Part shown: piece by piece, positions 49,315 to 64,000 of the stretch
Layout: every line of letters starts with the position of its first letter
How positions within the stretch are numbered: position 1 is the first letter of the stretch
Translations under genes and position numbers: made by a program
The notes under the pieces: generated by a model
Told to the model about the DNA's origin: nothing
Seen by the model: the letters and a program-made list of their open reading frames with translations, nothing else
Database searches by the model: none
Virus record (IMG/VR): IMGVR_UViG_3300020578_000006
Coordinates: 1-64,000 of that record
DNA: 64,000 bases
Strand: one strand, 5' to 3'

Positions 49315-50253
49315 ATGAGCGTAGACTTAACCTTTTTTAAGTCAAATCCAAACAATATCTTAAGAGTCAAAAGAACAGGTTCATCAAGATCGCATGTAAT
49401 TATTGACTTTGTTAAGAATAACAAAAGCCTTCTTTCCGGAAAAGAATACAACGTTAAAGATTATGAAAGTATAATGTGTTATAGTGTAAGCCCTAATATA
49501 GATGAATTAAAATATTATTTAAAAAATAAAAAAAAGAACGACTATCTCGAACTTAATGATAAGCTCGATCACTTTTATATTGCACGTGCATTAAAACTAC
49601 CAATAGCAAAAATCTTGGAAAAAGATAAGGATAAAATAGTAAAAAGCTTTTATAAAATATACATTTCGTTTTTGAAGCAGTATTATGTAGAAGAGCAAGA
49701 TTTAAAGAGAATTAAAAAGACTGTTAGTAATATTAGTGATTTTTCCATATTACTTCAATATCTTCCGTATGACAGTGAATATAAGAATGGTAAGAAAAGA
49801 GTTATTGTATTAGACAGAATTCGCAAATGGCTTTATTCCTATTTTTACCCCGGTTGTCTTCCTTTTATTGAATTATATGATAAAGAGCTTATATGGGCGC
49901 AAAATATTATGCAAACACTTTTACCTTTAAATTTAGAGTATGCCTATCTTAATATAGGTAGTGGTATTAAATTTGATGAGGCTAAAGATATATGGAGAGG
50001 TCTTATTAGAAGCAAATACGAAACAGCTATTAAGCTTTTATCTGAAGAGGAAGCAGAAGCCAAGGAAATTGACGACCAGGAAACGATTTTAGAAATAAAT
50101 TTATTAAGAGAGAAGCTTAAGACTGTTGTTGAGGCTTTAAGGTTTGATTCAGTAAAAAGTATTCAAGAATTAATTATGTTTTGGCCAGAAGAGCTTTCAC
50201 CCGGGCCTCAAATTACTATTGACCCAGTTGGCCGGTCTTTAGTCTTTAGATAA
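49315..50253 (+). CDS. hypothetical helical protein, paralog of 61444..62313
   Basis: Shared C-terminus W..LI......L...E...I.E.I..WP..L.P. Confidence 0.75.
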   Translation: MSVDLTFFKSNPNNILRVKRTGSSRSHVIIDFVKNNKSLLSGKEYNVKDYESIMCYSVSPNIDELKYYLKNKKKNDYLELNDKLDHFYIARALKLPIAKILEKDKDKIVKSFYKIYISFLKQYYVEEQDLKRIKKTVSNISDFSILLQYLPYDSEYKNGKKRVIVLDRIRKWLYSYFYPGCLPFIELYDKELIWAQNIMQTLLPLNLEYAYLNIGSGIKFDEAKDIWRGLIRSKYETAIKLLSEEEAEAKEIDDQETILEINLLREKLKTVVEALRFDSVKSIQELIMFWPEELSPGPQITIDPVGRSLVFR

Positions 50254-51618
50254 ATAGCCCTTAATTATATTAATTAATCCTTCCAGCATAGTTTTATAAG
50301 GCTCAGGGTAAAACAATAAACACTTTAAATATTCGATAATTTTCTTTAATTCTTGCTTTGATAATGTTTCTATACAAAACTCAGGTATGAGTACATCATT
50401 AGTATGATTAATTTTTTCCATTGATAGACCATTCCATACATATTCTTCTTTACCGTTTTCATGAATCCCTTTAATTCGACTCCCCAGGGGGCCATGTACA
50501 GTATTAATATATAAACGTAATTTGTTTTTAACACAAAAATCGACTATTCTATGGGTTTCATAAATATTTTGAATTAGCGGGCAAAACAGAAGCGAATATA
50601 ATCTATTAAGCGAAAGCAATTTTTCTATATTTTTTTGTACCATGTTAAAATTACCATTTTTTCTAATAAAATTATAATTAGATTCTGTTAAAGAATCTAT
50701 AGATAGCAATATACCCATATTGGGAAGTTTTGCAAATAAATCTTCTATTCTTTTGTTTAAAATAGAACCATTTGTAGTTACAAGAACAGATATATTTGGA
50801 TTAATTTCTGCTATACTATCCCATATTTTATAATATAAAGGTGTTAAAAACGGCTCACCGCCTAGAAAATTTGTCGTTGTTAAATGAGGTATAAATTCTT
50901 TAAGTTGATTGACAAAAGCATCATCATAGGGTGATATTAGTTGTGGTAGTTTTTCCCTATTTTTTCTTATAGAAGATGACCACTTTCCACCACACATAAT
51001 GCATTCGTAATTACAAACTGTTCCAAATTCAAAATCCATATTTACCGGCATATCATTGTATATACTAGAACGCCATGAATTAAACTTCTTAATTAATATA
51101 TTTTTGTTTAATGCAAGAATGCCTTTATAACACAAATCACAGCCTTTTGTAAAATCTAACTTAGATAATGCAGCTATTAAATCTTTTCTCTCTGTGCTAT
51201 TCCACATTTCTTTTATAGTTTTGTTGGGGTAGCTACCTAAGACATGCTGTCTATTATAACAGCATACATTGACATTTCCTGTAGAATCAAAATTAAGCGA
51301 TGTATATGGTGCACAGCAAATAGGAGGCTCTCTATGTATAATGTTTTCTTCTTTTAACACTTGTATGTTGGTTAGTAGTTTTTCCCTTTCAGATTCTCTA
51401 TAGAGATTATCTATTGCTGTATCTACAAACTCCTTATAGCCATAAGTGTCACACAACCACACAACAGTCTCAATAGGATTATCCACCTCATCAAGACTAC
51501 CGTCGTGCGGGTTAATTCTTACCGACATTGCTTTAAATTGCTCTGTAGAAAAAGGTGCTTGTCTTTCTTGTTTTATTGCTAAAAACAAATCAATTATTTT
51601 TTCTGGAAATTTAGACAT
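50239..51618 (-). CDS. radical SAM protein with N-terminal SPASM/twitch-like domain
   Basis: CCAPY...GNVNVCC; CNYECIMC; GGEPFL; TTNG; SIDS. Confidence 0.9.
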   Translation of the reverse strand: MSKFPEKIIDLFLAIKQERQAPFSTEQFKAMSVRINPHDGSLDEVDNPIETVVWLCDTYGYKEFVDTAIDNLYRESEREKLLTNIQVLKEENIIHREPPICCAPYTSLNFDSTGNVNVCCYNRQHVLGSYPNKTIKEMWNSTERKDLIAALSKLDFTKGCDLCYKGILALNKNILIKKFNSWRSSIYNDMPVNMDFEFGTVCNYECIMCGGKWSSSIRKNREKLPQLISPYDDAFVNQLKEFIPHLTTTNFLGGEPFLTPLYYKIWDSIAEINPNISVLVTTNGSILNKRIEDLFAKLPNMGILLSIDSLTESNYNFIRKNGNFNMVQKNIEKLLSLNRLYSLLFCPLIQNIYETHRIVDFCVKNKLRLYINTVHGPLGSRIKGIHENGKEEYVWNGLSMEKINHTNDVLIPEFCIETLSKQELKKIIEYLKCLLFYPEPYKTMLEGLINIIKGYLSKD

Positions 51619-52432
51619 ATATCTTACTTTTTTCTACGTAACTATCAAAAATGTATTTTAGCTTGTTAATTATTAGTTTACTAGATGTTGCATTTTTTGT
51701 TATTTCATCCTTTACAAATTCTTCAAAACACTCTTCTGCTTTATCTGAATGCCACGGCTTAACAAAACCATGATATTGAATAATATGTGCATCTTTTAAG
51801 GATTGTACAGAGGCTATAGATGAAACCACATTATATTTTTGCGGAAGGTAGAATACATCACCGGCGAAACACACATTAAATACAGGCTGATCACTCGACC
51901 ATGATTTTTCGGATGCTAATTTTATTAAAGATTGCTTGTACTTAGGCTTTAAGAATTTTTTAGAAAATGACATTAAACCACAATTAAATCTTTTGCGATT
52001 TTGTTCTATTGGGCTGTTTGGCTCAATCTCAGGAATGCCTAAATATTTTTCACACGCAGAAAACAAATGTTTATCTTCCCATAGCTCCTTAATATCATTA
52101 AGAAATACCATATCACTATCAAATATAATAATACGATCATACCCTAAATTCCCCATCTCAAATACATCAAATCTGTAGTATAAATTATATCCCCATTTTT
52201 GGGTAGTAGGTAGGCACCCACTATAATCATTATTCTTAGCATTAATAACAATAATGTTTTTATAAATTTTTTTAAGTGTTAAAATATTTTTTTCTGATAA
52301 ACTACCATCTGATAACAATATTATATCACCATCGAACCATGGATTACTTTCTTTTAAACTAATCAAAAAAACTTTCATACTAAGCACAAAACTATCGTTA
52401 AGAGCCAATAACATAGCAATCTTTTTATTCAT
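51611..52432 (-). CDS. glycosyltransferase family 8
   Basis: YYRFDVF, DRIIIFDSDM, FNCGLM, DQPVFN, YNV, IIQYHG.VKPW. Confidence 0.9.
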   Translation of the reverse strand: MNKKIAMLLALNDSFVLSMKVFLISLKESNPWFDGDIILLSDGSLSEKNILTLKKIYKNIIVINAKNNDYSGCLPTTQKWGYNLYYRFDVFEMGNLGYDRIIIFDSDMVFLNDIKELWEDKHLFSACEKYLGIPEIEPNSPIEQNRKRFNCGLMSFSKKFLKPKYKQSLIKLASEKSWSSDQPVFNVCFAGDVFYLPQKYNVVSSIASVQSLKDAHIIQYHGFVKPWHSDKAEECFEEFVKDEITKNATSSKLIINKLKYIFDSYVEKSKIYV

Positions 52433-52471
52433 TAATAAATAATTTAGTCAAAAACAATTTTATTTCAATGT

Positions 52472-53356
52472 ATGCCTAAAATATCTATAGTAATGCCAGT
52501 TCGCAATAACGAACAGTATTTAGATGAATCAATACAGAGTATTCTAAATCAGACAGAAAAGGACTATGAATTTTTAATATTTGCCGATAGATGTAATGAA
52601 GTAACACTATTTAAACTCTCTCAATACAAAGACAGTAGAGTTAAAATCATTTCTAACCCTAGCATAAAGGGCATTACAGACTCGTTAAACTTTCTTATAT
52701 CTAATGCATCGTCTAATATAATAGCCAGACAGGATGCAGATGACATTTCTTCTTTAGATAGACTAAAAATATTTTTTGACGAAAATCAAAAAACTCATCT
52801 TACTACTAGTAATTTTTTTATTAAAGTAGACAATCAATTAACTTTACAAAAAAAATCTAATCTTCACGTTGTAAATTTGTTTAATTTTTTATTTTTCTAT
52901 AATTTTGGAGCCCATGGGCAGTTATTCTTTAATAAACAGTTTTATAATTCACAATTTAAATATTGTCAAGATTATGAACTCTGTAGTAGTATTTTAAGAG
53001 AGAATTTTAAAGATTTTTATTTGATTGAAAAACCGATCTATACGTATAGAAAGCATAACAATTCTATTTTTAATAATCACCGGTCAAAACAAGTTTATTT
53101 CTCTCTTTTAACATCTCAAGAAAATATTAGGCATTTTTTAGGCCTTAATCCACCTCTCTGTAAAGTAAAAGATATGCGTAACTTTTTCTTAGAACATAAG
53201 AAGCCTGTACATACTAGCGAGACACTCTTTTTATCGATGACAAAGACTATACTTGAAAGATTTAAAAGTCTTTTTTGTTCTTCTGATATAGAGAAAAATG
53301 CAGTAGACGAAACATATTACAAAGCCTATAATTCTACTTTTATTAAATCACAATAA
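52472..53356 (+). CDS. glycosyltransferase family 2
   Basis: ISIVMPVRN.EQYL.ESIQSIL.Q, IARQDADDIS, QDYEL. Confidence 0.9.
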   Translation: MPKISIVMPVRNNEQYLDESIQSILNQTEKDYEFLIFADRCNEVTLFKLSQYKDSRVKIISNPSIKGITDSLNFLISNASSNIIARQDADDISSLDRLKIFFDENQKTHLTTSNFFIKVDNQLTLQKKSNLHVVNLFNFLFFYNFGAHGQLFFNKQFYNSQFKYCQDYELCSSILRENFKDFYLIEKPIYTYRKHNNSIFNNHRSKQVYFSLLTSQENIRHFLGLNPPLCKVKDMRNFFLEHKKPVHTSETLFLSMTKTILERFKSLFCSSDIEKNAVDETYYKAYNSTFIKSQ

Positions 53357-54015
53357 ATCTTTTGCAATTTTGAAAATATAAATTCTTTATCTCTTTCGGA
53401 AAAAACTACAGTCTTATGTTTTAAATTGATGCTAACTAACCATTTTCTAACCGTAGACTGAATATTTAGATCTGCAGGAAGATCGACCTCAAATACATTC
53501 TTCTGTCTGGTTTTTGTAATTATTTTATATTTTGCTATAGCAAGCAGTTTACCCTCTTCATTTAATATTGTTAACTCTTTATCAAATATAAGATTATAAT
53601 GGGAATAAAAATTATAATGATTGTTATTAAATTTATAATTTCTTATAATTTTATTTGCATATATGGAGGGAATATAATCTAGATTATTAGTTAGAAAACC
53701 TCTTTCGTAACTTCTTATTATCTTAAAGAACTTTCCACTATTTTCCAAGCAGTCTTTGTGTGACTTACCGCACGTTATATAAATTTTATTATTTTTATTA
53801 AATCTTATAGCAGCACACTTGATGTAAATTTTTTCATTATTCATTTTTTCATAATCTGGATCTGAAAAGTTTGGCATTAGAATAATGCCGTGCTTGGTTT
53901 TATAGGGTTCGTCCCATATTTTGGTCGAACGTAAAGGCTTAGGGTCTATACTATTGAGTAATTCATAGTAATCACCACTCTTTATTGCGTTTTGTCTTTT
54001 AATTAATAAATTCAT
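53326..54015 (-). CDS. hypothetical phage protein
   Basis: CAAI...GKSHKDC...GFLTN motif. Confidence 0.6.
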   Translation of the reverse strand: MNLLIKRQNAIKSGDYYELLNSIDPKPLRSTKIWDEPYKTKHGIILMPNFSDPDYEKMNNEKIYIKCAAIRFNKNNKIYITCGKSHKDCLENSGKFFKIIRSYERGFLTNNLDYIPSIYANKIIRNYKFNNNHYNFYSHYNLIFDKELTILNEEGKLLAIAKYKIITKTRQKNVFEVDLPADLNIQSTVRKWLVSINLKHKTVVFSERDKEFIFSKLQKIYCDLIKVEL

Positions 54016-54016
54016 T

Positions 54017-54772
54017 ATGAGACCGCTAGTATTGATATTTACCTGTAAAAAATATATTTATAGGTGTAAAGATATACAAGAAACTTGGGGCCATGACCTT
54101 AAAAAAAATAATATAGATTACTTTTTTGTTAGTGGTGACAATCTCGATATAGAGCCATATCTAAATATAGATTTTAAAGAAAGCTATGAACAACTTCCAC
54201 AAAAAACATATATTACTTTTAATAGAGTAAAAGATTTAAATTATACCCACTTTATTAAGACAGATGACGATACATTTTTTAACGTTATTTCGTTTTTAAA
54301 AGAGCTAAACAGCTTATCAAATTTTGACTACATAGGTAAGTTTAACAAGCAAACTTCAGCTTCTTCAAAAATTCATTATTTTAAATGTAATGATTCTTTT
54401 AAAATTCCCAAACGTATATCTAAATTTTCTTATGCAGAGGGGGGTTTTTATATTTTAAGCAAAAAAGCACTAAACTATATTTGTGCTCAAAAAGAAAGTA
54501 CATTCGTCAATAAACCTACATCCTATAAGGGGGAGGATGTTTTAGTGGGTAGCATACTAAAGAATAAAGTAAAATCATTAGACATTAAAAATAACAACTC
54601 AGAAAAATTTAATATGGATCTAACTTTGTTCTCTCTTCACCCTGTAGATACTAGCATATTCAAACAGCTATACAAAAAAACCTTTAATTCTCAATTAAAA
54701 ATCTTACAACAAAATCAACTTCTAAACGAATATAATATTAGAGATAAATTCTTGGCAAATCTTAAACCTTGA
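54017..54772 (+). CDS. galactosyltransferase/fringe-like glycosyltransferase (GT31-like)
   Basis: ESYEQLPQKT, FIKTDDDTF, YAEGGFYILS, EDVLVG. Confidence 0.85.
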   Translation: MRPLVLIFTCKKYIYRCKDIQETWGHDLKKNNIDYFFVSGDNLDIEPYLNIDFKESYEQLPQKTYITFNRVKDLNYTHFIKTDDDTFFNVISFLKELNSLSNFDYIGKFNKQTSASSKIHYFKCNDSFKIPKRISKFSYAEGGFYILSKKALNYICAQKESTFVNKPTSYKGEDVLVGSILKNKVKSLDIKNNNSEKFNMDLTLFSLHPVDTSIFKQLYKKTFNSQLKILQQNQLLNEYNIRDKFLANLKP

Positions 54773-56150
54773 AAAAATCTTCCGGTAGCTTCTTACAAAA
54801 GCCTACTTTTTCATAAATTTCTTTACCCGCCGTATCCACGTCCACAAAAGGAAATTGCCGCTCTAACATATATTGTCTTTGAGGCTCTTTAAAATTATTG
54901 TATTTTGATTTATCTAGCCAAAGCGTTTCCTGCCATAACTTTTTATCGAGATAGGGATATCTTACCTCTATACCATGGACTCCACAGCAATACTCACAAG
55001 AATAAGGATTATTATCATCATAATCTATAACACCATTAATATCCTTAAGCCTTTTAAATAGCTTATTAATACCCTTAAAGCCAATGGCATCTCCACCTAA
55101 GCCGGATAAACAAATCTTATATCCTTCTTTTTTTGCTTTTAAAAAAATAAGACCGGCCCCTATAAACCCATAAGTCTCTCTACATACATATCCTACAAAT
55201 TTATTTTTATAAAAATCAAAGTGAGTATAGGCATAGTCCTCGACATTTTTAAAAATTTCATCTCGAGTAATCTCATGCATACTATCTGTAGGGTCGATAA
55301 GCTCTTTATTGACAATATTAGGTATTAAAATCTGTTTTCCTTCTATGATAGGTGGATTTTTAGTACTCAATCCATGGCGCCATAATAAAACATTAGACGG
55401 CTTTTCTAATACATTGACGGAATAAGCTTTAAAAGGAAGGTTATACTTTAACAGGGCGCTGCAAATAGCTCCGCTATCATACCCCTCACTAACACCCATA
55501 AAAATTTTTTTAGAAGCAGCAACAGTTCTTTTCAATATACTTTCATCAAACGCCATTTTCCAATCATCTAAATTAACTTTGTGTTCATTATCTAAATCAA
55601 AAGCTGTTATTTTATTTAATTTTATATTATCATTGCTTATATCGTATGTGTAATAATAATTTCCATATACGTGAAAAATTTCTTTATACCCTAATACAGA
55701 CAGTGCGCTCTTATATGAAGCTATACCTATTGTATTATTATGAATACTAAAAAATATAGGCTTAGTACCGAAAGTGTCAGAGCCAAAAATTAATTTCTTT
55801 TTTTTCTTATCTAACAAAACGATAGTAAATTCACCATCAAGATATTTAAAAAATTCTGCTCCATACTCTTCATATGCTTTGATTATACTTTCTCCATCTG
55901 ATAGACTATCAGGGGTAATGTCTTTATAATTATATATTTCACCATTGAAAACCATTATGATGTCACCACATTTAGAAATAAGTGGTTGAGGGGTCAAGTC
56001 TCCGGTAATACTTAGTAAATTATGTATAAAGTGAAAGCCGCTTTCGTTTTTATAAGAAGTTAAATCTGGTCCTCTAAATTTTTGATAGAAATTGGCGGCA
56101 TTTAAAACTTCTTCGGATGTATCTTTATTTGTGACCAAAAAACTACACAT
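54762..56150 (-). CDS. asparagine synthetase (glutamine-hydrolysing)-like amidotransferase
   Basis: N-terminal Cys2, RGPD, FNGEIYN, degenerate PP-loop SEGYDS, SGLGGD, EVRYPYLD; TATAAATA 4 nt upstream. Confidence 0.88.
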   Translation of the reverse strand: MCSFLVTNKDTSEEVLNAANFYQKFRGPDLTSYKNESGFHFIHNLLSITGDLTPQPLISKCGDIIMVFNGEIYNYKDITPDSLSDGESIIKAYEEYGAEFFKYLDGEFTIVLLDKKKKKLIFGSDTFGTKPIFFSIHNNTIGIASYKSALSVLGYKEIFHVYGNYYYTYDISNDNIKLNKITAFDLDNEHKVNLDDWKMAFDESILKRTVAASKKIFMGVSEGYDSGAICSALLKYNLPFKAYSVNVLEKPSNVLLWRHGLSTKNPPIIEGKQILIPNIVNKELIDPTDSMHEITRDEIFKNVEDYAYTHFDFYKNKFVGYVCRETYGFIGAGLIFLKAKKEGYKICLSGLGGDAIGFKGINKLFKRLKDINGVIDYDDNNPYSCEYCCGVHGIEVRYPYLDKKLWQETLWLDKSKYNNFKEPQRQYMLERQFPFVDVDTAGKEIYEKVGFCKKLPEDFFKV

Positions 56151-57648: not shown

Positions 57649-58317
57649 ATGGTCAAAACTATGGTTATAGTTCCTCATGGAGATGATGAAATATTAGGCT
57701 TTTATGGGGCTATAAAAAGAAATTTAGAGCAGAACAATCATGTTAGTGTTGCGTTTATTATGGGGCCTAAGAACCTAACTAACGAAAGGAACACTCATCA
57801 ATTTCACACTATAGAAAAAGTTAAAGATAAGTTAGGTTATAACGAGGTGTTTTATCTAGATATTTTTAACGAACACAATATTCATTCAAATAAGCTCGAG
57901 CTCATCACAAGAATAGAAGAACTTGTATCTAATAATCATATAGATATCGTTTACACCACCCACTGGGGTGACAACCATCAAACACATAAATTATGCTATG
58001 AAGCGGTTGTTGCAGCCATAAGACCTATAGGGCCATGTAAAGCATCGAGACTAATTACAGGGGAGATTATATCCTCTACAGATCAAGCCCCGCAAACAGA
58101 AGCACATAGCTTTATCCCTAATATATTTTTGGAATTGTCCGAACAAGAAATAGAGGAAAAGATTAATCTTTTGAAAATGTATGAATATGAATATATGCAA
58201 ACCCCTCACCCTAGATCTGAGTGGGGGCTAAAAGCGGTAGCTAGCTTTAGAGGTATACAAGCAGGTGTTAAATACGCTGAAGGATATTTTTGTGCAAGAG
58301 AAATCATTAAAAAATAA
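57649..58317 (+). CDS. PIG-L/LmbE family N-acetyl-sugar deacetylase
   Basis: PHGDDEILG, DNHQTH, KINLLKMY..E...PHPRS...LA.FRG...G..YAE.F. Confidence 0.9.
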   Translation: MVKTMVIVPHGDDEILGFYGAIKRNLEQNNHVSVAFIMGPKNLTNERNTHQFHTIEKVKDKLGYNEVFYLDIFNEHNIHSNKLELITRIEELVSNNHIDIVYTTHWGDNHQTHKLCYEAVVAAIRPIGPCKASRLITGEIISSTDQAPQTEAHSFIPNIFLELSEQEIEEKINLLKMYEYEYMQTPHPRSEWGLKAVASFRGIQAGVKYAEGYFCAREIIKK

Positions 58318-59527
58318 CATAGAACAAATTGTAAATCAAAAGCATTTTTGTATTTTACCGTGGGTACATTTATATCATTTTACTGATAAAAAAGTATATC
58401 CATGCCCTGTTATGGGTGCATGGGGAGTCAACTCATTAGGCAACACTTCTGATGATATAGAAAAATTATGGAATAGTGAGCATCTTAAAGAGATAAGACG
58501 CAAGATGCTTAACAACGAAGCAATACCTTTTTGTAATAGAAACTGTAATGATTCTATAAACTCGTGCAAAAGACATTTTGGATTAGAGCTCATAGACAAG
58601 GCATCCTCAGCCATTCTAAATACCAAGCCTGATGGAAGTGTCGACCCTATAAACTTTATTGCGTGGAATATTATAGAATCAAACAAATGCAATTTTAAAT
58701 GTAGTTATTGCAATGTAAAATACTCTAATCGATTTGGTGAAAAATTAGAGACGTTCTCAGATACAGAGGCCATGAAGGATAAGATATTTCCATATCTTGA
58801 TAATATAGAAGAACTTTGGCTAGCATCTGGGGAGTCAGCCATACAAGACAGCTATTATGATATTCTAGAAGAACTTATTACAAGAAACCGTACAGATATA
58901 AGATTGTTTTTTATCACTAATATGAGTGTTGTAAATTATAAAGGTAGAAATATTTTTGAAATACTGAGCAAATTTAAAAATGCAGTAATATTTGGAAGTA
59001 TAGATGATAGGGAATCTAGACTTGAATACATAAGGTTTGGAAGTTCTTACAGTAAGATATTAGAAAATAGAATAGAGCTTTTAAAATATCCTAGTATTAA
59101 GTTTTACTTGCAACCTGTAATTAGTATATTTAATATTTTCTCTTTTCCAGATTTTCATAGAGATTGGTATAATCGAGGTCTTATAGGGGCTGACGAAGTA
59201 AGATATTATGTATTAGATTCTCCTTCATATCTTCAAGCCAACATTTTGCCTTTAAAATATAAAAACAAACTTTTAGAAAAATGGCGCGGCTATCAACAAT
59301 GGATAAAGGACAACTTAACTGATAAGGTAGATACATACCCTAACAGATGTAACCCCGTTAACTTTATTGACACACTTATAAACCATATAAGCGTACCAAA
59401 AGATAATTTAGAGCTACAGCATTTTTTTACTTTTATAGATGAAAATGATAAAAAGACCGGGCTTGCTTTTAATAATGTTTTTAATGAATATGGAGATATC
59501 AAATGCATTTCAAAGAAATATTTTTAA
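58265..59527 (+). CDS. radical SAM protein with N-terminal SPASM/twitch-like domain
   Basis: FCILPWVH...VYPC; CNFKCSYC; start uncertain. Confidence 0.88.
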   Translation: MLNTLKDIFVQEKSLKNNIEQIVNQKHFCILPWVHLYHFTDKKVYPCPVMGAWGVNSLGNTSDDIEKLWNSEHLKEIRRKMLNNEAIPFCNRNCNDSINSCKRHFGLELIDKASSAILNTKPDGSVDPINFIAWNIIESNKCNFKCSYCNVKYSNRFGEKLETFSDTEAMKDKIFPYLDNIEELWLASGESAIQDSYYDILEELITRNRTDIRLFFITNMSVVNYKGRNIFEILSKFKNAVIFGSIDDRESRLEYIRFGSSYSKILENRIELLKYPSIKFYLQPVISIFNIFSFPDFHRDWYNRGLIGADEVRYYVLDSPSYLQANILPLKYKNKLLEKWRGYQQWIKDNLTDKVDTYPNRCNPVNFIDTLINHISVPKDNLELQHFFTFIDENDKKTGLAFNNVFNEYGDIKCISKKYF

Positions 59528-60345
59528 ATTTTTATAATTCTTTACCCATACAAAAGTTTATTAAGAATATTAATAATATTGGTAGGGGGGTTAAAGATAT
59601 TAATCAAACAGGGTTTCCCTCTAAGCTTTCTACACTAATATCTTTTAACTTTAAAGAAAATAAATTACTAAATTTTAAGATCTATTGTGAAATATTTAGA
59701 AAATTTAAAAAGTACGAAATCTTAAAGTTCTTACCAACAGACAAAGACTTTAACTACTATTTTAGTTATTGGGACAACACCCTTTCATCTAGCCTTTGCT
59801 TTGGTATAAAAGTAGACAAAGACCATCTACCCACTCAATATTTTCATATTAAATTAAACCGTGTAATAAAAGAATTTACAGAGTGTAAAATTTATAAGGA
59901 AAGGCCAACTTTTAAGAGAACGGGCATTTCATTTGAGTATACTGGTTCTTCTGTTAAAAAGAAATACTATTTTTACTTTACGGAAAGTGATGACATAGAG
60001 TATTTTAAGCAAAAATATAATCTAACATTAGACGGGGGGTGTATTGATCATATAGAATTTACAGAATTTGATAACGGTGATCAAAAAATAATAGTAGTAT
60101 ATTCATATAAAAACGAGGCTGCTTACTCTAATATTCAAAAAACTTTTTTTCATCATACTTTAATTAAAGACTGTGTAGAATACTTTACCCAAGACCACGA
60201 CCTCTTACCTTGTTACTTCGGTGTCTATAAAAACAATACAATTGCACTGTATTGGAGCGTTACAGAAAAAGAATTAAAAAATGTAGTAAATATAGATCCG
60301 CTAGCCTTTAAAAATAAATTAGAAAAATTACTCGATAAAGTATGA
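59503..60345 (+). CDS. hypothetical protein in the rSAM-amidinotransferase operon
   Basis: 280 aa, aromatic beta-strand-rich, translationally coupled to both neighbours. Confidence 0.75.
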   Translation: MHFKEIFLNFYNSLPIQKFIKNINNIGRGVKDINQTGFPSKLSTLISFNFKENKLLNFKIYCEIFRKFKKYEILKFLPTDKDFNYYFSYWDNTLSSSLCFGIKVDKDHLPTQYFHIKLNRVIKEFTECKIYKERPTFKRTGISFEYTGSSVKKKYYFYFTESDDIEYFKQKYNLTLDGGCIDHIEFTEFDNGDQKIIVVYSYKNEAAYSNIQKTFFHHTLIKDCVEYFTQDHDLLPCYFGVYKNNTIALYWSVTEKELKNVVNIDPLAFKNKLEKLLDKV

Positions 60346-61436
60346 AATGTGTTAATAGCTATAATGAATGGGATCCTTTAGAGGAGATTATTGTTGGTAA
60401 TGGATTTCCAGCAGATCTTCCTTCAGATGATCTGGGGTTTAAATTCTTTTTTCATGATAATCTTTTAGGACCAGATGGCGCATTATATGCAGGAAGATGG
60501 TATTTAGAAAAGAGATATATTGAAGAATTAAGAGAGGATTTAGAGTCATTTGTCAATATTTTAAAACAAAGAAATATTACTGTAAGAAGGCCTAAGGAAC
60601 CTGCAGGACCTCATGAAGTGAAAACGCTTTGTTGGTCATCAAGCAACTATCCTGCTCTCAATGTTCGAGATCTTACACTAGTAGTAGGTAATGAAATAAT
60701 AGAAACATCTGTATTGGCACGGTGGCGTCAATTTGAAAACGATTATCTTAAGCATTTATTCTTAGACTACTTTAAGAGAGGGGCTAAATGGACGGCTGCC
60801 CCAAGGCCCTTAAGTACTGATAAGTCTATAGATTATTCTAGAGTAGAGCAAACACCAGAAATAAAAAAGTATTATGATACTCTTAAACAACAAGAACATA
60901 GTAATCTAGATTGTGGGGTAGAGATAATGTTTGATGCAGCAAATTGTATTAGAATGGGCAACACAATAATGTTTAACGCGCCAACTGAACATGAGAGATT
61001 GGGCGCAGAGTGGCTACAGAGACATCTAGGTAAAAAATATAAAGTATGGACCGTTAATATATTTGATAACCATATAGATTCTTTATTTCTTCCTATTCGC
61101 CCGGGGTTAGCAATCTTAACCCTCCCCATAAAGCACAAATTGCCTGAGCCACTAAGAAAATGGGATATTGTCTATGTTCCTTCTTTACTAGAGCCGCACA
61201 AAACCCCTGATTATATGCCTATTGCATCAGAGAAAATATTTTGTAACCTGCTCTCTCTTTCACCGAACGAAGTCATATGTCAGCCAGAATATTATGATAT
61301 TTTATCTAAAAGGCTAAAACCATTTAAAGTAGAGGTAACACCAAACAGATTAAGACATAGTCGATTATTTGGTGGAGGACATCATTGTCTCACACTGGAT
61401 ATAAGAAGAAAGGGCAAATTAGAAAATTATTTCTAA
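60342..61436 (+). CDS. L-arginine-dependent amidinotransferase (AGAT/StrB1 family)
   Basis: NSYNEWDPLEEIIVG, NVRDL, MFDAAN (Asp), NHIDS (His), GGGHHCLTLDIRR (Cys) catalytic triad. Confidence 0.92.
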   Translation: MKCVNSYNEWDPLEEIIVGNGFPADLPSDDLGFKFFFHDNLLGPDGALYAGRWYLEKRYIEELREDLESFVNILKQRNITVRRPKEPAGPHEVKTLCWSSSNYPALNVRDLTLVVGNEIIETSVLARWRQFENDYLKHLFLDYFKRGAKWTAAPRPLSTDKSIDYSRVEQTPEIKKYYDTLKQQEHSNLDCGVEIMFDAANCIRMGNTIMFNAPTEHERLGAEWLQRHLGKKYKVWTVNIFDNHIDSLFLPIRPGLAILTLPIKHKLPEPLRKWDIVYVPSLLEPHKTPDYMPIASEKIFCNLLSLSPNEVICQPEYYDILSKRLKPFKVEVTPNRLRHSRLFGGGHHCLTLDIRRKGKLENYF

Positions 61437-61443: not shown

Positions 61444-62313
61444 ATGCTCTACAAGTTGGCACAAAAACTATCCTTAAGGGGAATTATTATAAAAATTAGT
61501 TTTATTAATAATGGTATTGCTATCTTTAGAACTGTTTGTAATAGTAAGCATGCAGACTTATTTGGGTTGAAAGGTTCAGATTCTGAATTTACAGATATTA
61601 TTACAGAGCAGCCCGTAGAGTTCGATGAAAACTCTGTTACATGTCTAGAGTATCTTTATGTTCCTAAGCATATTTTTTTAGATGATTTTGAAAAAAATAC
61701 CGAATATACAAATTTATTTGGGGAAGATTTTCTTATAAAGAGTAAACATTATATCGAAACTACAACTAAAAAAATTCAAGAAGAGCGGGCCAGATTTATA
61801 ATGTACTCTTCCGAACAACTAGAACCTTGCAACCGATTTTCTAATGATTTGCTAGATGATTATTATTATATGAAGTTTTACCCTGAAAAGCGAGATAATA
61901 TTTCAAGAGAAATTGTTTATGATAAAATTAAAGAAGATATTATTAAAAAGTACTTTCTTATTAAGGATTCTGATAATAGAAAAATAAAAGGAGCTTTTAG
62001 AAGGCTTGGTATTACAAACGCTGCAGAGCAAATAAACGATCCAGATTATATTAATGCGTTTAAGAATATATGGTATAGCCTTATAGAAGAACAAAAAGAA
62101 GAGCAACTCTTACAGTTGGATACGGCCAAACAAAATATTCTAAAAGCCGAGGGTGTTGATAAAGAGGATTTTTTACAGCAATGTGATATACTTGAATTAA
62201 TGATCAAACAAATAGATAAAACTGTTCTATTAGGTTGTAATTCTATCAGTGAAATTATTAAAACCTGGCCCAGCTATCTTCAACCTGAACCATATTACAT
62301 AGACAATGAGTGA
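61444..62313 (+). CDS. hypothetical helical protein, paralog of 49315..50253
   Basis: Shared C-terminal WP..L.P region. Confidence 0.75.
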   Translation: MLYKLAQKLSLRGIIIKISFINNGIAIFRTVCNSKHADLFGLKGSDSEFTDIITEQPVEFDENSVTCLEYLYVPKHIFLDDFEKNTEYTNLFGEDFLIKSKHYIETTTKKIQEERARFIMYSSEQLEPCNRFSNDLLDDYYYMKFYPEKRDNISREIVYDKIKEDIIKKYFLIKDSDNRKIKGAFRRLGITNAAEQINDPDYINAFKNIWYSLIEEQKEEQLLQLDTAKQNILKAEGVDKEDFLQQCDILELMIKQIDKTVLLGCNSISEIIKTWPSYLQPEPYYIDNE

Positions 62314-63052
62314 AACAATTAACTTCTTCTGGTTAGGAGACAAGCTTGGATTATTAGAGCAGCTATCATTGAAGTCATTTTTAGACCATGGACATAAAAC
62401 AATTCTATGGGCTTACAATATCAAATGCCACGGGGTGCCTTCAGGTGTCATTGTTAATAATGCTAATGAAATACTTTCCGAAGATCGAATATTTAAATAT
62501 ACCGGTAACGGCGATTGTCGTGTAAATAGTATCGGTGGGTTTTCTGACTTATTTAGATATTATCTTTTGAATAAAGTTGGCGGGTGGTATTGTGATATGG
62601 ATGTTACCTGTCTAGCCCCTTTCAATAATATTAATCAGGAGTATGTTATAAGACCTCATAAAAATACTAAAATTGTTGGTAATATCCTTAAGACCCCTAA
62701 CAATAATAGTTTTCTAGAAGATTGTATAGCTGAAACCGAAAGACTTGTCGATAAGGATAACGATAGATGGATTAAACCATTAGAGATATTAAGAGATTGC
62801 GTATACAAGCACGGTATTGATAAGTTTATTGTTCAAAAAGATTGGTTTGGTAATGATGATATTGAGGAGATAAGAAAAATGTTAAACATAGGAGTATTCA
62901 CCAAATATATTAATTTACCTAAGTATGCTATTCATTGGTGTAATGAGGCAATTTCTACTGGTCGCTGGGACTATTCTATAAAGCGAGATTTTAATAAACC
63001 ATTGCCTACTACTCTATTTTATAACCTATTAAAAAAACATGAACTCTTGTAA
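62306..63052 (+). CDS. glycosyltransferase, GT32 alpha-1,4-transferase-like
   Basis: FFWLG..L..LEQLSLKSF, FSDLFRY, GGWYCDMDV. Confidence 0.88.
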   Translation: MSETINFFWLGDKLGLLEQLSLKSFLDHGHKTILWAYNIKCHGVPSGVIVNNANEILSEDRIFKYTGNGDCRVNSIGGFSDLFRYYLLNKVGGWYCDMDVTCLAPFNNINQEYVIRPHKNTKIVGNILKTPNNNSFLEDCIAETERLVDKDNDRWIKPLEILRDCVYKHGIDKFIVQKDWFGNDDIEEIRKMLNIGVFTKYINLPKYAIHWCNEAISTGRWDYSIKRDFNKPLPTTLFYNLLKKHELL

Positions 63053-63839
63053 TATAGCGTTTGTAACTACGTTAAGCGATGATTTTTTGCCTGGAGCGGT
63101 TGCAGCAATTAAAAGCCTCATTAAAAATACCCCTACATTTAGCTACCCTATAATAATCTTAGAGTGGGGAGGCTTATCTGATTATAATAAAAGCTTACTT
63201 AAGAAAATATATAAAAATATTTCTTTTAAACATGTAGACTCTAATAACTACCCTGAGTATCAATCCGGTGAAAATAGAGTTTGGAATTATAATTTTAACT
63301 ATAGATATGATATATTTTTACTCGATAAATTTGATAGGATAATTTTCTTTGATTCTGATATAATTTTTAATATAGATATATCCAAATTGGCTAAGATAAA
63401 ATGTAATTTTGGTGCTGTTCCAAGGTCTAGAGGGACTAATGTTCAGATAGGAAAAAGACCGGGGTTTAATGCCGGCTTAATGATTATTGGGAAGAAGTTT
63501 TTAAATAAAGAAACCCGGGATAGTTTAATAAAGCTTTCTAAGCAGCCAGCTATTTTGGATATCCGTGTAAAAAAACAATTATGGATAGGAAATGAGCCCA
63601 TTCTAAACAATTTCTTTAAAACATTTACCAAATTACCAAAAAAATATAACTTGTGTATAGATGATATAAAGCCAAAAATTAATTTACTAGACTATAATAT
63701 ACATTATATTGGTAAACGTAAGCCGTGGAATAATTCTATAGATAGTTACGCCACTAACAAATTAGCATCAAAATACGGACAGTTCTTTGCAGTTCTTACG
63801 TCTAAAAAGCTTGTTAATTTATATAAAAAGTATACTTAA
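63039..63839 (+). CDS. glycosyltransferase family 8
   Basis: YRYDIF, DRIIFFDSDI, FNAGLM, YNL, IHYIGKRKPW. Confidence 0.88.
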   Translation: MNSCNIAFVTTLSDDFLPGAVAAIKSLIKNTPTFSYPIIILEWGGLSDYNKSLLKKIYKNISFKHVDSNNYPEYQSGENRVWNYNFNYRYDIFLLDKFDRIIFFDSDIIFNIDISKLAKIKCNFGAVPRSRGTNVQIGKRPGFNAGLMIIGKKFLNKETRDSLIKLSKQPAILDIRVKKQLWIGNEPILNNFFKTFTKLPKKYNLCIDDIKPKINLLDYNIHYIGKRKPWNNSIDSYATNKLASKYGQFFAVLTSKKLVNLYKKYT

Positions 63840-63842
63840 TAT

Positions 63843-64000
63843 ATGGAACTAGATGATATATTAGCGTTTTTTAATGAAGATGCTTTATGCCCAGAAAACA
63901 TTAAAAATTGTAGATCTCTTAGAGATGCTTACTTTAAAGAGTACAATGGCCTTTTAAACAAAAAATGTGAACATTGTACTTTAGTATCCTTGAGAGACAA
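63843..64000 (+). CDS. hypothetical protein, truncated by window edge (MELDDILAFF...CEHC)
   Basis: Hand translation; open to the end of the window. Confidence 0.6.
   Translation, partial: MELDDILAFFNEDALCPENIKNCRSLRDAYFKEYNGLLNKKCEHCTLVSLRD

What the first reader, a model, noticed from the sequence alone, without database searches (positions are those of the whole stretch)
49315..64000. Phage-encoded amidino/amino-sugar-type biosynthetic cluster
Seen: within 15 kb, 3 rSAM/SPASM enzymes, an amidinotransferase, a PIG-L deacetylase, an Asn-synthetase-like amidotransferase and 5 glycosyltransferases. Several have late promoters (56150, 56201), and the block lies directly behind tail-fibre genes. 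Known: this enzyme set parallels aminoglycoside and unusual-sugar pathways: StrB1 amidinotransferase (streptomycin), BtrD/NeoD PIG-L deacetylases, BtrN/NeoN radical SAMs, and WbpS-type uronamide-forming Asn synthetases. Inference: deacetylate a HexNAc, amidinate the freed amine, amidate a carboxyl and oxidise/epimerise by rSAM, producing a cationic guanidinylated glycan on virion fibres (or a secreted small molecule). I know of no characterised phage pathway like this; no NDP-sugar synthesis genes are visible in the window.
Basis: partly seen in the sequence, partly recalled or inferred. Interest (0 to 1): 0.87.

Follow-up and report, generated by a model that had tools for sequence, protein, structure and literature searches.

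The report
Phage sugar-tailoring island with amidinotransferase
An uncultured T4-like phage carries, next to its tail-fibre genes, a 15-kb block of soluble sugar-building enzymes centred on an arginine-dependent amidinotransferase; hundreds of environmental phages keep the same core, which probably makes an unusual positively charged (guanidino) sugar whose target is still unknown.

Summary
Window 49315-64000 encodes three radical-SAM enzymes, a StrB1/AGAT-family amidinotransferase with an intact Asp-His-Cys triad, a PIG-L deacetylase, an AsnB-like amidotransferase and five GT-A glycosyltransferases (GT8 x2, GT2, GT31, GT32), directly behind a tail-fibre gene.

New points:
- The window is bases 1-64000 of IMGVR_UViG_3300020578_000006 (229.7 kb).
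- The block continues past the window into a truncated UDP-sugar 6-dehydrogenase-like gene.
- All three radical-SAM enzymes carry their auxiliary-cluster (twitch) domain at the N-terminus (NCBIfam NF033640).
- The unannotated gene that overlaps the amidinotransferase start has a prenyltransferase-type (ABBA) barrel fold.
- No cluster protein has a membrane segment.

Relatives of the amidinotransferase occur on 488 IMG/VR contigs. In 24 of 25 non-redundant close loci it sits with PIG-L. It is often part of the cassette dehydratase - PIG-L - DegT aminotransferase - reductase - amidinotransferase - GT8 - GT32.

Best reading: a cytoplasmic pathway that turns a sugar amine into a guanidino group and builds a short glycan. 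The glycan most likely goes on virion fibres; the target is inferred, not shown.

Similar modules were noted, uncharacterised, in Campylobacter phages (2010) and a cyanophage (2025).

The parts
47774..48517 (+). Short tail-fibre protein with an S74-type C-terminal chaperone region; upstream boundary of the island
   Evidence: PHROG tail-fibre families, best E 1.4e-28; translation
48519..49280 (+). 253-aa Gly/Ser/Thr/Asn-rich protein of unknown family. Possibly a fibre tip and a candidate acceptor.
   Evidence: No Pfam or PHROG hit; translation; N-X-S/T sequons not enriched over composition
49315..50253 (+). 312-aa protein of unknown function; its C-terminal ~80 residues resemble those of the 289-aa protein at 61444
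   Evidence: No family hit; BLASTP E 3e-5 to 61444-62313
50239..51618 (-). Radical-SAM enzyme A, with the twitch/SPASM domain N-terminal to the core
   Evidence: Radical_SAM 53 bits at residues 197-338, SPASM at 101-163; NF033640 153.7 bits, below the 170 cut-off; CxxxCxxC present
51611..52432 (-). GT8 retaining glycosyltransferase
   Evidence: Glyco_transf_8, E 1.5e-18
52472..53356 (+). GT2 glycosyltransferase
   Evidence: Glycos_transf_2, E 3.2e-17
53326..54015 (-). 229-aa protein of unknown function, conserved in the closest relative L004; TATAAATA at 54055-54062(-)
   Evidence: No family hit; homologue in L004; motif
54017..54772 (+). GT31-type (Galactosyl_T/Fringe) glycosyltransferase
   Evidence: Galactosyl_T, E 3.3e-13; Fringe, E 9.4e-7
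54762..56150 (-). AsnB-like glutamine amidotransferase. Cys2 nucleophile present; divergent synthetase half with an SEGYDS variant of the PP-loop.
   Evidence: GATase_7 72.5 bits, Asn_synthase 24 bits; TIGR01536 121 bits, below cut-off; PDB AsnB, E 5e-12; sequence
56155..56162 (-). T4-late-type promoter motif TATAAATA, 4 nt upstream of the AsnB-like start
   Evidence: positional enrichment 7 of 11 against 7.1%
56201..57355 (+). Radical-SAM enzyme B, N-terminal twitch family
   Evidence: NF033640 197.7 bits (cut-off 170); SPASM at residues 7-67, Radical_SAM at 115-262
57649..58317 (+). PIG-L/LmbE-family N-deacetylase; first gene of a seven-gene plus-strand run
   Evidence: PIG-L 52.4 bits; phrog_11796; PDB diacetylchitobiose deacetylase, E 1e-4; the PHxDD and HxxH motifs can be read in the sequence
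58265..59527 (+). Radical-SAM enzyme C, N-terminal twitch family
   Evidence: NF033640 241 bits; invariant Cys29/47/90 (Cys94 nearly) and Cys142/146/149 in 32 homologues; AF2 model pLDDT 88, with only generic radical-SAM neighbours in the PDB
59503..60345 (+). 280-aa protein with an ABBA (PT-barrel) prenyltransferase fold; overlaps the amidinotransferase start by 4 nt
   Evidence: AF2 pLDDT 87, five beta-beta/alpha-alpha repeats; Foldseek PDB hits DMATS1, PirF, KgpF, LimF, PatF, TM 0.46-0.58; no sequence-level family hit; homologue upstream of the amidinotransferase in L015, hhalign 97.8%
60342..61436 (+). L-arginine-type amidinotransferase (StrB1/AGAT/SxtG/HsvA family); signature enzyme of the island
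   Evidence: PDB 1bwd, E 3.6e-47, full length, triad aligned; phrog_25854; 1683 homologues; 488 viral contigs
61444..62313 (+). 289-aa protein of unknown function; distant C-terminal paralogue of 49315-50253
62306..63052 (+). GT32-type (DXD) glycosyltransferase
   Evidence: Gly_transf_sug, E 1.1e-9
63039..63839 (+). Second GT8 glycosyltransferase
   Evidence: Glyco_transf_8, E 3.2e-20
63843..64000 (+). Start of a 62-aa ORF that runs off the window. On the parent contig it is followed (window-equivalent 64024-64797) by a 257-aa UDP-sugar 6-dehydrogenase-like gene. That gene keeps the Rossmann motif and catalytic Cys but lacks the C-terminal UDP-binding domain.
   Evidence: L009 is identical to the window over their overlap; ORFs; Pfam; PDB UDP-glucose dehydrogenases, E 7e-14, GGxC motif aligned

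Best explanation
The block is one functional unit: a phage-encoded, entirely soluble (cytoplasmic) pathway for tailoring sugars and attaching them to an acceptor.

Shown:
- The enzyme families and their catalytic motifs.
- The co-conservation of the core (amidinotransferase, PIG-L, GT8-type transferases, a radical-SAM enzyme) across many phages.
- The absence of any membrane protein, flippase, polymerase or lipid-carrier transferase.

Inferred chemistry:
1. A HexNAc unit is N-deacetylated by the PIG-L enzyme. In many relatives the amine comes instead from a 4,6-dehydratase plus a DegT aminotransferase.
2. The freed sugar amine receives an amidino group from L-arginine through the Cys-His-Asp amidinotransferase. 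This gives a guanidino sugar.
3. The dehydrogenase-like enzyme just beyond the window and the AsnB-like amidotransferase make and amidate a uronic acid.
4. The five GT-A transferases assemble a short oligosaccharide step by step.
5. The three N-terminal-twitch radical-SAM enzymes carry out C-H-level tailoring (oxidation, epimerisation or deoxygenation).
6. The prenyltransferase-fold protein, translationally coupled to the amidinotransferase, binds a diphosphate substrate and may add a prenyl group.

Inferred target: a cytoplasmic acceptor glycosylated directly, most likely virion proteins, with the neighbouring fibres as first candidates. The result would be a cationic glycan coat on the particle.
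For: Enzyme identities and motifs.

The same gene order occurs on four IMG/VR contigs with a 100%-identical amidinotransferase.

Co-conservation:
- The amidinotransferase family is on 488 IMG/VR contigs.
- Among 38 non-redundant loci, 27 have a radical-SAM gene, 26 a GT, 26 DegT, 24 PIG-L and 24 an SDR within 10 kb.
- Among the 25 loci with at least 45% identity, PIG-L is present in 24.
- The recurrent cassette SDR-PIG-L-DegT-RmlD-like-amidinotransferase-GT-GT32 was checked with Pfam.
- Independent contigs show the same core.

Cellular parallels:
- Pseudobdellovibrionaceae locus: GT2, GT2, DegT, SDR, UDP-Glc dehydrogenase, amidinotransferase, N-twitch radical SAM.
- Bacteroidota locus: GT2, AsnB, seven N-twitch radical-SAM genes, GT32.

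No membrane machinery: no hydrophobic 19-mer reaches TM level in any cluster protein. No Wzx/Wzy-like ORF occurs among 1024 ORFs of the 38 loci.

Link to the virion:
- Fibre genes flank the block, and fibre genes precede it in L004, L096, L097 and L013-15.
- A late-type motif lies before two cluster genes.
- In cyanophage S-SCSM2R an amidinotransferase-annotated protein and a prolyl hydroxylase were found in purified virions (PMC12801897).
Against: - No product, acceptor or modification has been observed for any member.
- The virion-proteome amidinotransferase of S-SCSM2R (ORF266) is not the orthologue of this gene. Only ORF309 matched.
- Fibre adjacency may simply reflect the usual hypervariable region of T4-like genomes. 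My fibre profile found fibres in only 7 of 38 loci.
- The long plus-strand run starting at PIG-L has only a sigma-70-like site, and that scan is at chance level. Late expression of the whole block is therefore not established.
- N-X-S/T sequons are not enriched in the neighbouring fibre proteins.
- In relatives, GT9 and Kdo-type genes (DAHP_synth_1, CTP_transf_3) point to LPS-like chemistry.
- The prenyltransferase fold, and the halogenase and dioxygenases seen in relatives, fit peptide or small-molecule chemistry as well as sugar chemistry.
- The window lacks DegT and SDR genes, so the amine source here rests on PIG-L alone.
Confidence: 0.4

Rival explanations
1. Remodelling of the host envelope. 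The soluble transferases act at the cytoplasmic face on host LPS core, lipid-linked O-antigen or capsule intermediates. Host transporters then export the altered glycan, which changes the cell surface to block superinfection or stop progeny re-adsorbing to debris (the 'lock-out' idea proposed for cyanophage LPS genes).
For: - GT8, GT2 and GT32/Caps_synth are typical LPS and capsule families.
- Relatives carry a GT9 heptosyltransferase-type gene and Kdo-type genes, DAHP_synth_1 and CTP_transf_3.
- Bacterial homologous arrays look like polysaccharide loci.
- The lock-out hypothesis is summarised in PMC5332604.
- The phage also encodes a PEP-CTERM protein and a prepilin-type protein, so it does tamper with host envelope systems.
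Against: - No initiating phosphoglycosyl transferase, flippase, polymerase or ligase occurs in any of the 38 loci.
- A late-type promoter precedes two genes, and the block sits inside the fibre module.
- Nothing in the window suggests a temperate lifestyle.
Confidence: 0.24
2. A diffusible small molecule. The enzymes would build a guanidinylated, possibly prenylated pseudo-oligosaccharide or glycoside, loosely aminoglycoside-like, that acts on the host or on competitors.
For: - Sequence parallels to StrB1, SxtG and HsvA.
- PIG-L and radical-SAM enzymes occur in aminoglycoside pathways (established knowledge).
- The prenyltransferase-fold protein, and the tryptophan halogenase and PhyH dioxygenase in relatives, are typical of natural-product pathways.
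- The authors of the S-SCSM2R paper called their genes 'antibiotic synthesis genes'.
Against: - No cyclitol or 2-deoxy-inosose synthase, no scaffold-forming enzyme, no exporter and no self-resistance gene.
- Five GT-A transferases are many for a small molecule.
- Gene content varies from phage to phage in the way glycan loci do.
Confidence: 0.12
3. Side-chain modification of a protein or peptide without a central role for sugars. The amidinotransferase, prenyltransferase-fold protein, radical-SAM/SPASM enzymes, AsnB-like enzyme and (in relatives) hydroxylases and a halogenase would modify residues of a fibre protein or a small peptide, for example Lys to homoarginine followed by guanidine prenylation.
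For: - The closest structural neighbours of the 280-aa protein include the cyanobactin peptide prenyltransferases PatF, LimF, KgpF and PirF.
- SPASM/twitch radical-SAM enzymes often act on peptides (anSME and SkfB among the top fold hits).
- Asp/Arg hydroxylase, PhyH and halogenase genes occur in relatives.
- An 81-aa aromatic-rich ORF lies in the only intergenic gap.
Against: - The amidinotransferase is most tightly linked to sugar-nucleotide genes (DegT, SDR, PIG-L), not to peptide-maturation genes.
- No precursor peptide, leader-recognition domain or protease was found.
- The prenyltransferase-fold gene is present in only 5 of 38 loci.
Confidence: 0.1
4. DNA hypermodification: the sugars and the amidino group decorate a modified base to evade restriction, as with the glucosylated hydroxymethylcytosine of T-even phages.
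For: - It is a T4-like phage with a dCMP deaminase next to the block.
- Phage DNA glycosylation is well established (established knowledge).
- Radical-SAM enzymes take part in some thymidine hypermodifications (established knowledge).
Against: - No hydroxymethylase, DNA kinase, transglycosylase or GT-B DNA glucosyltransferase was seen among the window genes scanned.
- In Campylobacter phage CP220, which carries a comparable module, the only reported DNA modification is 7-amido-7-deazaguanine, made by the 7-deazaguanine pathway.
- Cellular homologous loci look like glycan loci.
Confidence: 0.06
5. No common pathway: a hypervariable island of unrelated accessory genes that accumulated beside the fibre genes.
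For: - GC is lower than in the rest of the window, 0.27-0.31 against about 0.34.
- Genes lie on both strands.
- Content varies between relatives.
Against: - The core is kept across amidinotransferase identities from 100% down to about 45%, and in different gene orders (24 of 25 with PIG-L).
- The same associations recur in bacteria.
- Neighbouring genes overlap at their starts and stops.
Confidence: 0.06

Closest known systems
Radical-SAM plus 'glycine amidinotransferase' module of Campylobacter phages CP220 and CPt10 (Firehammervirus; PMC2853527)
   Same: - A T4-like phage with a cluster of several radical-SAM genes, one amidinotransferase (30% identical over 96% of the query, E 9e-41) and, in CP220, two GT-A-type genes, lying beside baseplate genes.
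- Described in 2010 as an interchangeable module of unknown function.
   Different: - The Campylobacter radical-SAM genes are not of the N-terminal-twitch family; my searches found no hits to them.
- No PIG-L, AsnB-like, GT8/GT31/GT32 set or prenyltransferase-fold gene is annotated there.
- A PAP2 phosphatase is present there and absent here.
'Antibiotic synthesis genes' cluster of Synechococcus phage S-SCSM2R (PMC12801897)
   Same: The amidinotransferase (ORF309, 29% identity) is embedded among five glycosyltransferases, a radical-SAM gene and a DegT-type (AHBA_syn) gene in a T4-like cyanophage. The function is stated as unclear.
   Different: It has 2OG-Fe(II) oxygenases and a GT25. No PIG-L, N-twitch radical SAM, AsnB-like or PT-barrel gene is annotated. 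It does not lie beside fibre genes.
LPS/capsule gene islands of marine T4-like phages (for example P-SSM2-type cyanophages; discussed in PMC5332604)
   Same: Lytic T4-like phages that carry glycosyltransferases and sugar-nucleotide genes. T4-like environmental genomes with up to 12 radical-SAM genes are also reported.
   Different: Those islands are defined by Gmd/WcaG/ManC/KdsA-type genes. The amidinotransferase, PIG-L and twitch radical-SAM core is not part of their description.
Aminoglycoside pathways: StrB1 (streptomycin), BtrD/NeoD PIG-L deacetylases, BtrN/NeoN radical-SAM enzymes
   Same: StrB1 is the best solved-structure match of the amidinotransferase. The combination of PIG-L deacetylation, amidination and radical-SAM oxidation on amino sugars or cyclitols is the nearest characterised chemistry (established knowledge).
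   Different: No cyclitol-forming enzyme and no pathway aminotransferase in the window. The radical-SAM enzymes have no detectable sequence match to any solved structure, BtrN included. Identity to StrB1 is only about 30%, and similarity to AGAT, SxtG and HsvA is equal.
NCBIfam NF033640, the N-terminal twitch radical-SAM family in bacteria
   Same: Two of the three phage enzymes score above the family cut-off. Bacterial members form tandem arrays of up to seven paralogues, some with AsnB, GT2 and GT32 genes as here.
   Different: No member has a published function that I could find. Some Bdellovibrionota arrays have no glycosyltransferase nearby.
ABBA (PT-barrel) prenyltransferases: PatF, LimF, KgpF, PirF, DMATS1
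   Same: Same ten-strand barrel of beta-beta/alpha-alpha repeats in a confident model, with Foldseek probability 1.0. Invariant Lys, Arg, Tyr and His residues on the strands.
   Different: No sequence-level similarity to any Pfam, NCBIfam, PHROG or PDB entry. TM-scores are only 0.46-0.58. Prenyl transfer is not shown.
Virus-encoded virion glycosylation (mycobacteriophage capsid/tail glycosylation, cited in PMC11256854; chlorovirus and mimivirus capsid/fibril glycans, from established knowledge)
   Same: Virus-encoded soluble glycosyltransferases that decorate structural proteins in the cytoplasm, without lipid-carrier machinery.
   Different: Those systems have no amidinotransferase, PIG-L or radical-SAM components. 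Here glycosylation of virions is not demonstrated.

Membership tests
Amidinotransferase family (AGAT/StrB1, pentein fold) | Full-length homology to characterised members | tested here: met
   StrB1 E 3.6e-47, AGAT 5.8e-46, SxtG 3.8e-45 and HsvA 5.1e-42, over residues 4-363
Amidinotransferase family (AGAT/StrB1, pentein fold) | Catalytic Asp-His-Cys triad | tested here: met
   The FDAAN Asp, the H-[IV]-D-S His and the GGG-x-H-C Cys align with StrB1. D198, H244 and C349 are invariant in 16 diverse homologues.
Amidinotransferase family (AGAT/StrB1, pentein fold) | Arginine-dependent amidino transfer to a defined acceptor | not testable with these tools
   Needs an enzyme assay
N-terminal twitch radical-SAM family (NCBIfam NF033640) | Score above the curated cut-off (170 bits) | tested here: met
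   241 bits (58265-59527) and 197.7 bits (56201-57355). The third gene (50239-51618) scores 153.7, below the cut-off.
N-terminal twitch radical-SAM family (NCBIfam NF033640) | CxxxCxxC cluster motif plus an N-terminal Cys set for an auxiliary cluster | tested here: met
   Cys142/146/149 and Cys29/47/90 are invariant, and Cys94 nearly so, in 32 sequences. SPASM lies N-terminal to the core in all three.
PIG-L/LmbE N-deacetylases | Pfam PF02585 above the gathering score, and the metal-binding motifs | tested here: met
   52.4 bits against a cut-off of 28.2. The P-H-G-D-D and H-x-x-H motifs can be read in the translation.
Class II (Ntn) glutamine amidotransferase / asparagine synthetase B-like | N-terminal Cys nucleophile and GATase domain | tested here: met
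   The sequence starts M-C. GATase_7 72.5 bits.
Class II (Ntn) glutamine amidotransferase / asparagine synthetase B-like | Canonical SGGxDS PP-loop in the synthetase domain | tested here: inconclusive
   The variant S-E-G-Y-D-S is present. Asn_synthase scores only 24 bits, and TIGR01536 121 bits against a cut-off of 267.
Aminoglycoside-type biosynthetic gene cluster | Cyclitol-forming enzyme (2-deoxy-scyllo-inosose synthase or inositol-phosphate synthase) and pathway aminotransferases | tested here: not met
   None of the 15 cluster ORFs, nor the next ORFs on the contig, match such families
Wzx/Wzy- or ABC-dependent O-antigen/capsule locus | Initiating polyprenyl-phosphate transferase, flippase, polymerase or transporter (polytopic membrane proteins) | tested here: not met
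   Maximum 19-residue hydropathy is 1.71 in the cluster proteins. No Wzx/Wzy-like ORF among 1024 ORFs of 38 related loci.
Campylobacter-phage radical-SAM/amidinotransferase module | Several radical-SAM genes clustered with one amidinotransferase in a T4-like phage | tested here: met
   Architecture is shared and the amidinotransferases are homologous. The radical-SAM genes are not orthologous.
ABBA aromatic/peptide prenyltransferases | PT-barrel fold | tested here: met
   AF2 pLDDT 87; the top 50 Foldseek hits listed are all ABBA prenyltransferases
ABBA aromatic/peptide prenyltransferases | Sequence membership in a known prenyltransferase family, and prenyl-diphosphate use | tested here: not met
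   No Pfam, NCBIfam, PHROG or PDB sequence hit, even at E <= 10. Activity is not testable here.

The most novel reading that the evidence does not exclude
Phages of many lineages make guanidino sugars, a glycan modification not known from any characterised polysaccharide or glycoprotein as far as I know. They would do so by arginine-dependent amidination of sugar amines, and display the sugars on tail fibres or capsids. On this reading the N-terminal-twitch radical-SAM family would be a new class of glycan-tailoring enzymes. The new PT-barrel family would couple diphosphate or prenyl chemistry to the guanidino group. It would also explain the radical-SAM/amidinotransferase module of Campylobacter phages, unexplained since 2010.
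Probability: 0.25. Interest if true: 0.85.

Novelty: new variant of a known kind. Interest (0 to 1): 0.62.

Why it matters
If the amidinotransferase acts on sugar amines, this would be a new sugar modification: a strongly basic guanidino group on a glycan. It would be encoded by hundreds of environmental phages, with consequences for how virions stick to anionic cell surfaces, resist enzymes or evade recognition.

It would also:
- give a function to three enzyme families that currently have none (the phage amidinotransferase clade, NF033640 radical-SAM enzymes and a new PT-barrel family);
- turn a 15-year-old puzzle in Campylobacter phage genomes into a testable hypothesis;
- provide cultured systems in which to test it (S-SCSM2R on Synechococcus WH7803; CP220).

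If the cluster instead remodels the host envelope, it is a new toolkit for phage-driven changes to the cell surface.

Tried and rejected
- Near-identity DNA search of the block against 50,697 phage records: no match.
- Single-sequence scan of 185,579 genomes for the radical-SAM enzyme: nothing. The alignment-based scan did work.
- N-X-S/T sequon enrichment in fibre and other proteins as a hint of N-glycosylation: none, all z <= 2.0.
- Sigma-70 promoter and terminator scans of 46-64 kb: at chance level, 108 against 100 and 10 against 7. I draw no timing conclusion from the site at 57615-57642.
- Rfam scan for riboswitches, for example guanidine-sensing ones: only the 8 tRNAs.
- Sequence-level identification of the 280-aa, 312-aa, 289-aa, 229-aa and 253-aa proteins with Pfam, PHROGs and NCBIfam, even at E <= 10: nothing usable. 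A profile against PDB sequences was run for the 280-aa protein only: nothing.
- Fold search of the radical-SAM model: only generic neighbours (anSME, MoaA, SkfB, viperin, BlsE), TM about 0.36-0.40. No functional call is possible.
- Literature searches for an N-terminal twitch or SPASM radical-SAM family: no paper.
- Filing as an aminoglycoside cluster or an O-antigen/capsule locus: rejected, because the defining genes are missing.
- The 301-aa ORF upstream of the amidinotransferase in L011 is not a PT-barrel homologue.

Full report
**What the window is.** The amidinotransferase scan of IMG/VR returned four contigs with a 100% identical protein. One of them, IMGVR_UViG_3300020578_000006 (229,717 bp), matches at contig position 60342, the same as the window coordinate. 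Its fetched stretch (L009, contig 50342-71433) is base-for-base identical to window 50342-64000. The window is therefore bases 1-64000 of that contig.

It is a distant T4-like myovirus:
- gp20-type portal at 42652-44466, tail-sheath stabiliser, tail-fibre proteins and dCMP deaminase;
- portal only 27-32% identical to cultured T4-like phages;
- eight tRNAs;
- GC about 0.33;
- no near-identical DNA among 50,697 phage records.

**The observation.**
- Three radical-SAM proteins: 50239-51618(-), 56201-57355(+) and 58265-59527(+).
- Five GT-A glycosyltransferases: GT8 at 51611-52432(-) and 63039-63839(+), GT2 at 52472-53356(+), Galactosyl_T/Fringe at 54017-54772(+) and Gly_transf_sug at 62306-63052(+).
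- An AsnB-like amidotransferase at 54762-56150(-).
- A PIG-L deacetylase at 57649-58317(+).
- An amidinotransferase at 60342-61436(+). Pfam did not detect it. It nevertheless matches StrB1 (E 3.6e-47), human AGAT, SxtG and HsvA over its full length, with the catalytic Asp, His and Cys aligned. These residues are invariant in 16 diverse homologues.

The block starts right after a tail-fibre gene (47774-48517).

The promoter claim is partly right:
- Exact TATAAATA motifs lie 4 nt before the AsnB-like start (56155-56162, minus strand) and before the 229-aa gene (54055-54062).
- The one claimed for 56201 is only a near-match.
- The motif is not more frequent than chance in this AT-rich window. However, 7 of its 11 copies lie within 50 nt upstream of a same-strand gene start, against 7.1% for the 55 other 8-mers of the same composition. 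It therefore behaves like a real late-promoter element.

*(i) The block runs on.* Twenty-four bases past the window end the contig encodes a 257-aa UDP-glucose/GDP-mannose dehydrogenase-like protein. It has the Rossmann motif and the catalytic GGxC cysteine but lacks the C-terminal UDP-binding domain. The same short form recurs in related phages. After it come a phosphoribosyltransferase, two cell-wall hydrolase-type genes and another tail-collar fibre. The island therefore lies inside the fibre region.

*(ii) The radical-SAM enzymes are an unusual family.* All three have the auxiliary-cluster (SPASM/twitch) domain N-terminal to the core. They belong to, or lie next to, NCBIfam NF033640 (241, 198 and 154 bits; cut-off 170). 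Conserved cysteines for both clusters are present. They have no sequence match to any solved structure. A confident model (pLDDT 88) finds only generic radical-SAM neighbours.

*(iii) A prenyltransferase-fold gene.* The unannotated 280-aa gene at 59503-60345 overlaps the amidinotransferase start by 4 nt. Its model (pLDDT 87) folds as a ten-strand ABBA/PT barrel. All top Foldseek hits are prenyltransferases: DMATS1, PirF, KgpF, LimF and PatF, with TM 0.46-0.58. No sequence-level relation to any known family is detectable. A homologue sits in the same position in L004 and L013-15.

*(iv) No membrane proteins.* None of the cluster proteins has a membrane-spanning segment.

**Is it one unit?** I tested this with related loci. 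The amidinotransferase family has 1683 hits in the large protein database and occurs on 488 IMG/VR contigs. I reduced 84 fetched viral loci to 38 clusters at 85% amidinotransferase identity. I then classified their ORFs with profiles seeded from Pfam-verified genes. Numbers of loci with each gene class within 10 kb:

| Gene class | Loci (of 38) |
|---|---|
| Any radical SAM | 27 |
| Any glycosyltransferase | 26 |
| DegT aminotransferase | 26 |
| PIG-L | 24 |
| SDR dehydratase/reductase | 24 |
| GT32 | 15 |
| Short dehydrogenase | 7 |
| PT-barrel gene | 5 |

- Among the 25 clusters with at least 45% identity to the window protein, PIG-L is present in 24. The exception is a locus cut by a contig end.
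- One order recurs in many loci: 4,6-dehydratase-type SDR, PIG-L, DegT, RmlD-like reductase, amidinotransferase, GT-A, GT32. I confirmed this cassette with Pfam.
- Independent metagenome contigs of 60-238 kb show the same core, often directly behind S74-type fibre genes.
- A more distant class has two N-twitch radical-SAM genes, DegT, the amidinotransferase, SDRs and a full-length UDP-glucose dehydrogenase.

The amidinotransferase is thus embedded in amino-sugar nucleotide metabolism across a wide range of phages.

**Cellular counterparts.** N-twitch radical-SAM genes are found mainly in Bdellovibrionota and Bacteroidota, usually as tandem arrays of paralogues.
- A Bacteroidota chromosome has GT2, AsnB, seven such genes, a GT-A-like gene and GT32 in a row.
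- A Pseudobdellovibrionaceae contig has GT2, GT2, DegT, SDR, UDP-glucose dehydrogenase, an amidinotransferase and an N-twitch radical SAM.
- Some arrays have no transferase nearby, so a sugar substrate for this family is likely but not certain.

**Mechanism.**

Shown: the enzyme families, their intact catalytic motifs, their co-conservation, and the lack of any lipid-carrier, flippase or polymerase gene. There is none in the window and no Wzx/Wzy-like ORF among 1024 ORFs of the 38 loci.

Inferred:
1. A HexNAc unit is deacetylated by PIG-L. In relatives the amine is instead installed by the dehydratase and DegT.
2. The amine is converted to a guanidino group with arginine as donor.
3. A hexose is oxidised to a uronic acid and amidated by the AsnB-like enzyme.
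4. The five transferases build a short glycan.
5. The radical-SAM enzymes tailor it.
6. The PT-barrel protein acts on, or together with, the guanidino product.

Because everything is soluble, the acceptor should be cytoplasmic. I favour virion proteins for three reasons:
- the island sits inside the fibre module;
- the late-type motif precedes two of its genes;
- in cyanophage S-SCSM2R an amidinotransferase-annotated protein was detected in purified virions (PMC12801897). That protein is not the orthologue of this gene.

I put this overall reading at about 0.4.

**Rivals.**
- *Host-envelope remodelling* is the main one. GT9 and Kdo-type genes occur in relatives. The 'lock-out' idea is summarised in PMC5332604. 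The phage also encodes a PEP-CTERM protein and a prepilin-type protein.
- *A diffusible guanidino glycoside* and *a peptide/protein side-chain pathway* are kept alive by the PT-barrel fold and by the halogenase and dioxygenases in relatives.
- *DNA modification* is unlikely. No matching genes were seen, and CP220, which has a comparable module, has only 7-amido-7-deazaguanine reported.

**Comparison with what is known.** The nearest described things are uncharacterised.
- The interchangeable module of five radical-SAM genes plus a 'glycine amidinotransferase' in Campylobacter phages CP220 and CPt10, noted in 2010 (PMC2853527).
- The 'antibiotic synthesis genes' of cyanophage S-SCSM2R, whose role the authors call unclear (PMC12801897).

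The aminoglycoside parallel (StrB1, BtrD, BtrN) is a chemical analogy, not membership, because the cyclitol and aminotransferase genes are absent. The block is also not an O-antigen or capsule locus in the defined sense.

**Verdict.** I rate it a new variant of a known but unexplained kind. It has new components: N-twitch radical-SAM enzymes, a new PT-barrel family, PIG-L, an AsnB-like enzyme and a truncated dehydrogenase. The comparative result makes the function testable.

Noticed in passing
window 13611-14327 (-) and 12880-13614 (-): The phage encodes a 238-aa secreted protein ending in a PEP-CTERM sorting motif (Pfam E 9e-5). Next to it is a 244-aa protein that starts with a prepilin-type methylation motif (M-K-A-F-T-L-V-E). 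Both hint at a Gram-negative host with exosortase and type II/IV pilin machinery, and at phage tampering with the host envelope.
   Followed up: partly
window 16305, 18289, 30927, 42633, 56155 (TATAAATA); many TAAATAAT sites, e.g. 7845, 8953, 15626, 18513, 37824: The T4-late-like motif sits only 2-11 nt from start codons, where a Shine-Dalgarno sequence would normally lie. The related 8-mer TAAATAAT lies upstream of genes in 12 of 27 copies. This suggests near-leaderless late mRNAs, or a combined promoter and translation-initiation element.
   Followed up: partly
window 2596-3291 (-) and 23736-24530 (+): Two further glycosyltransferases lie far from the island: a GT32/Caps_synth type and a Glyco_transf_17 (GnT-III-like) type. 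The phage's sugar toolkit is therefore larger than the flagged block.
   Followed up: no
window 26054-29566 (-): A 1170-aa glycine-rich fibre-like protein (long poly-Gly and GGxGG tracts) explains the local GC peak of 0.45 and the strong negative GC skew.
   Followed up: partly
window 49315-50253 and 61444-62313: Two unknown proteins at opposite ends of the island share a C-terminal ~80-residue region ending in a W-P-x-x-L-x-P-x-P motif (BLASTP E 3e-5). They are not conserved in the closest relative L004.
   Followed up: partly
window 57347-57592 (-): An 81-aa aromatic-rich ORF lies in the only sizeable intergenic gap of the island, between radical-SAM B and PIG-L, opposite a sigma-70-like site at 57615-57642. 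Whether it is a real gene is unknown.
   Followed up: no
L015 13283-14701, L015 12507-13286, L004 11763-12545: Related islands carry a flavin-dependent tryptophan halogenase (Pfam E 8.6e-84), a PhyH dioxygenase and an Asp/Arg hydroxylase next to the amidinotransferase/PIG-L core.
   Followed up: no
L095 4384-15689 (Bacteroidota chromosome); L099 8698-13336 (Bacteriovoracaceae): Bacterial N-terminal-twitch radical-SAM genes form tandem arrays of four to seven paralogues. This is an unexplained gene amplification in Bacteroidota and Bdellovibrionota.
   Followed up: partly
L117 8585-9205, L096 3806-4432, L005 9378-10004: The DegT-type aminotransferases in these phage cassettes are only about 205-215 aa, roughly half the usual length. 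It is unclear whether they are functional alone.
   Followed up: no
window 23640-23732 (+): A tRNA-Ile with anticodon TAT, 93 nt long by ARAGORN, is unusually long for a tRNA-Ile.
   Followed up: no
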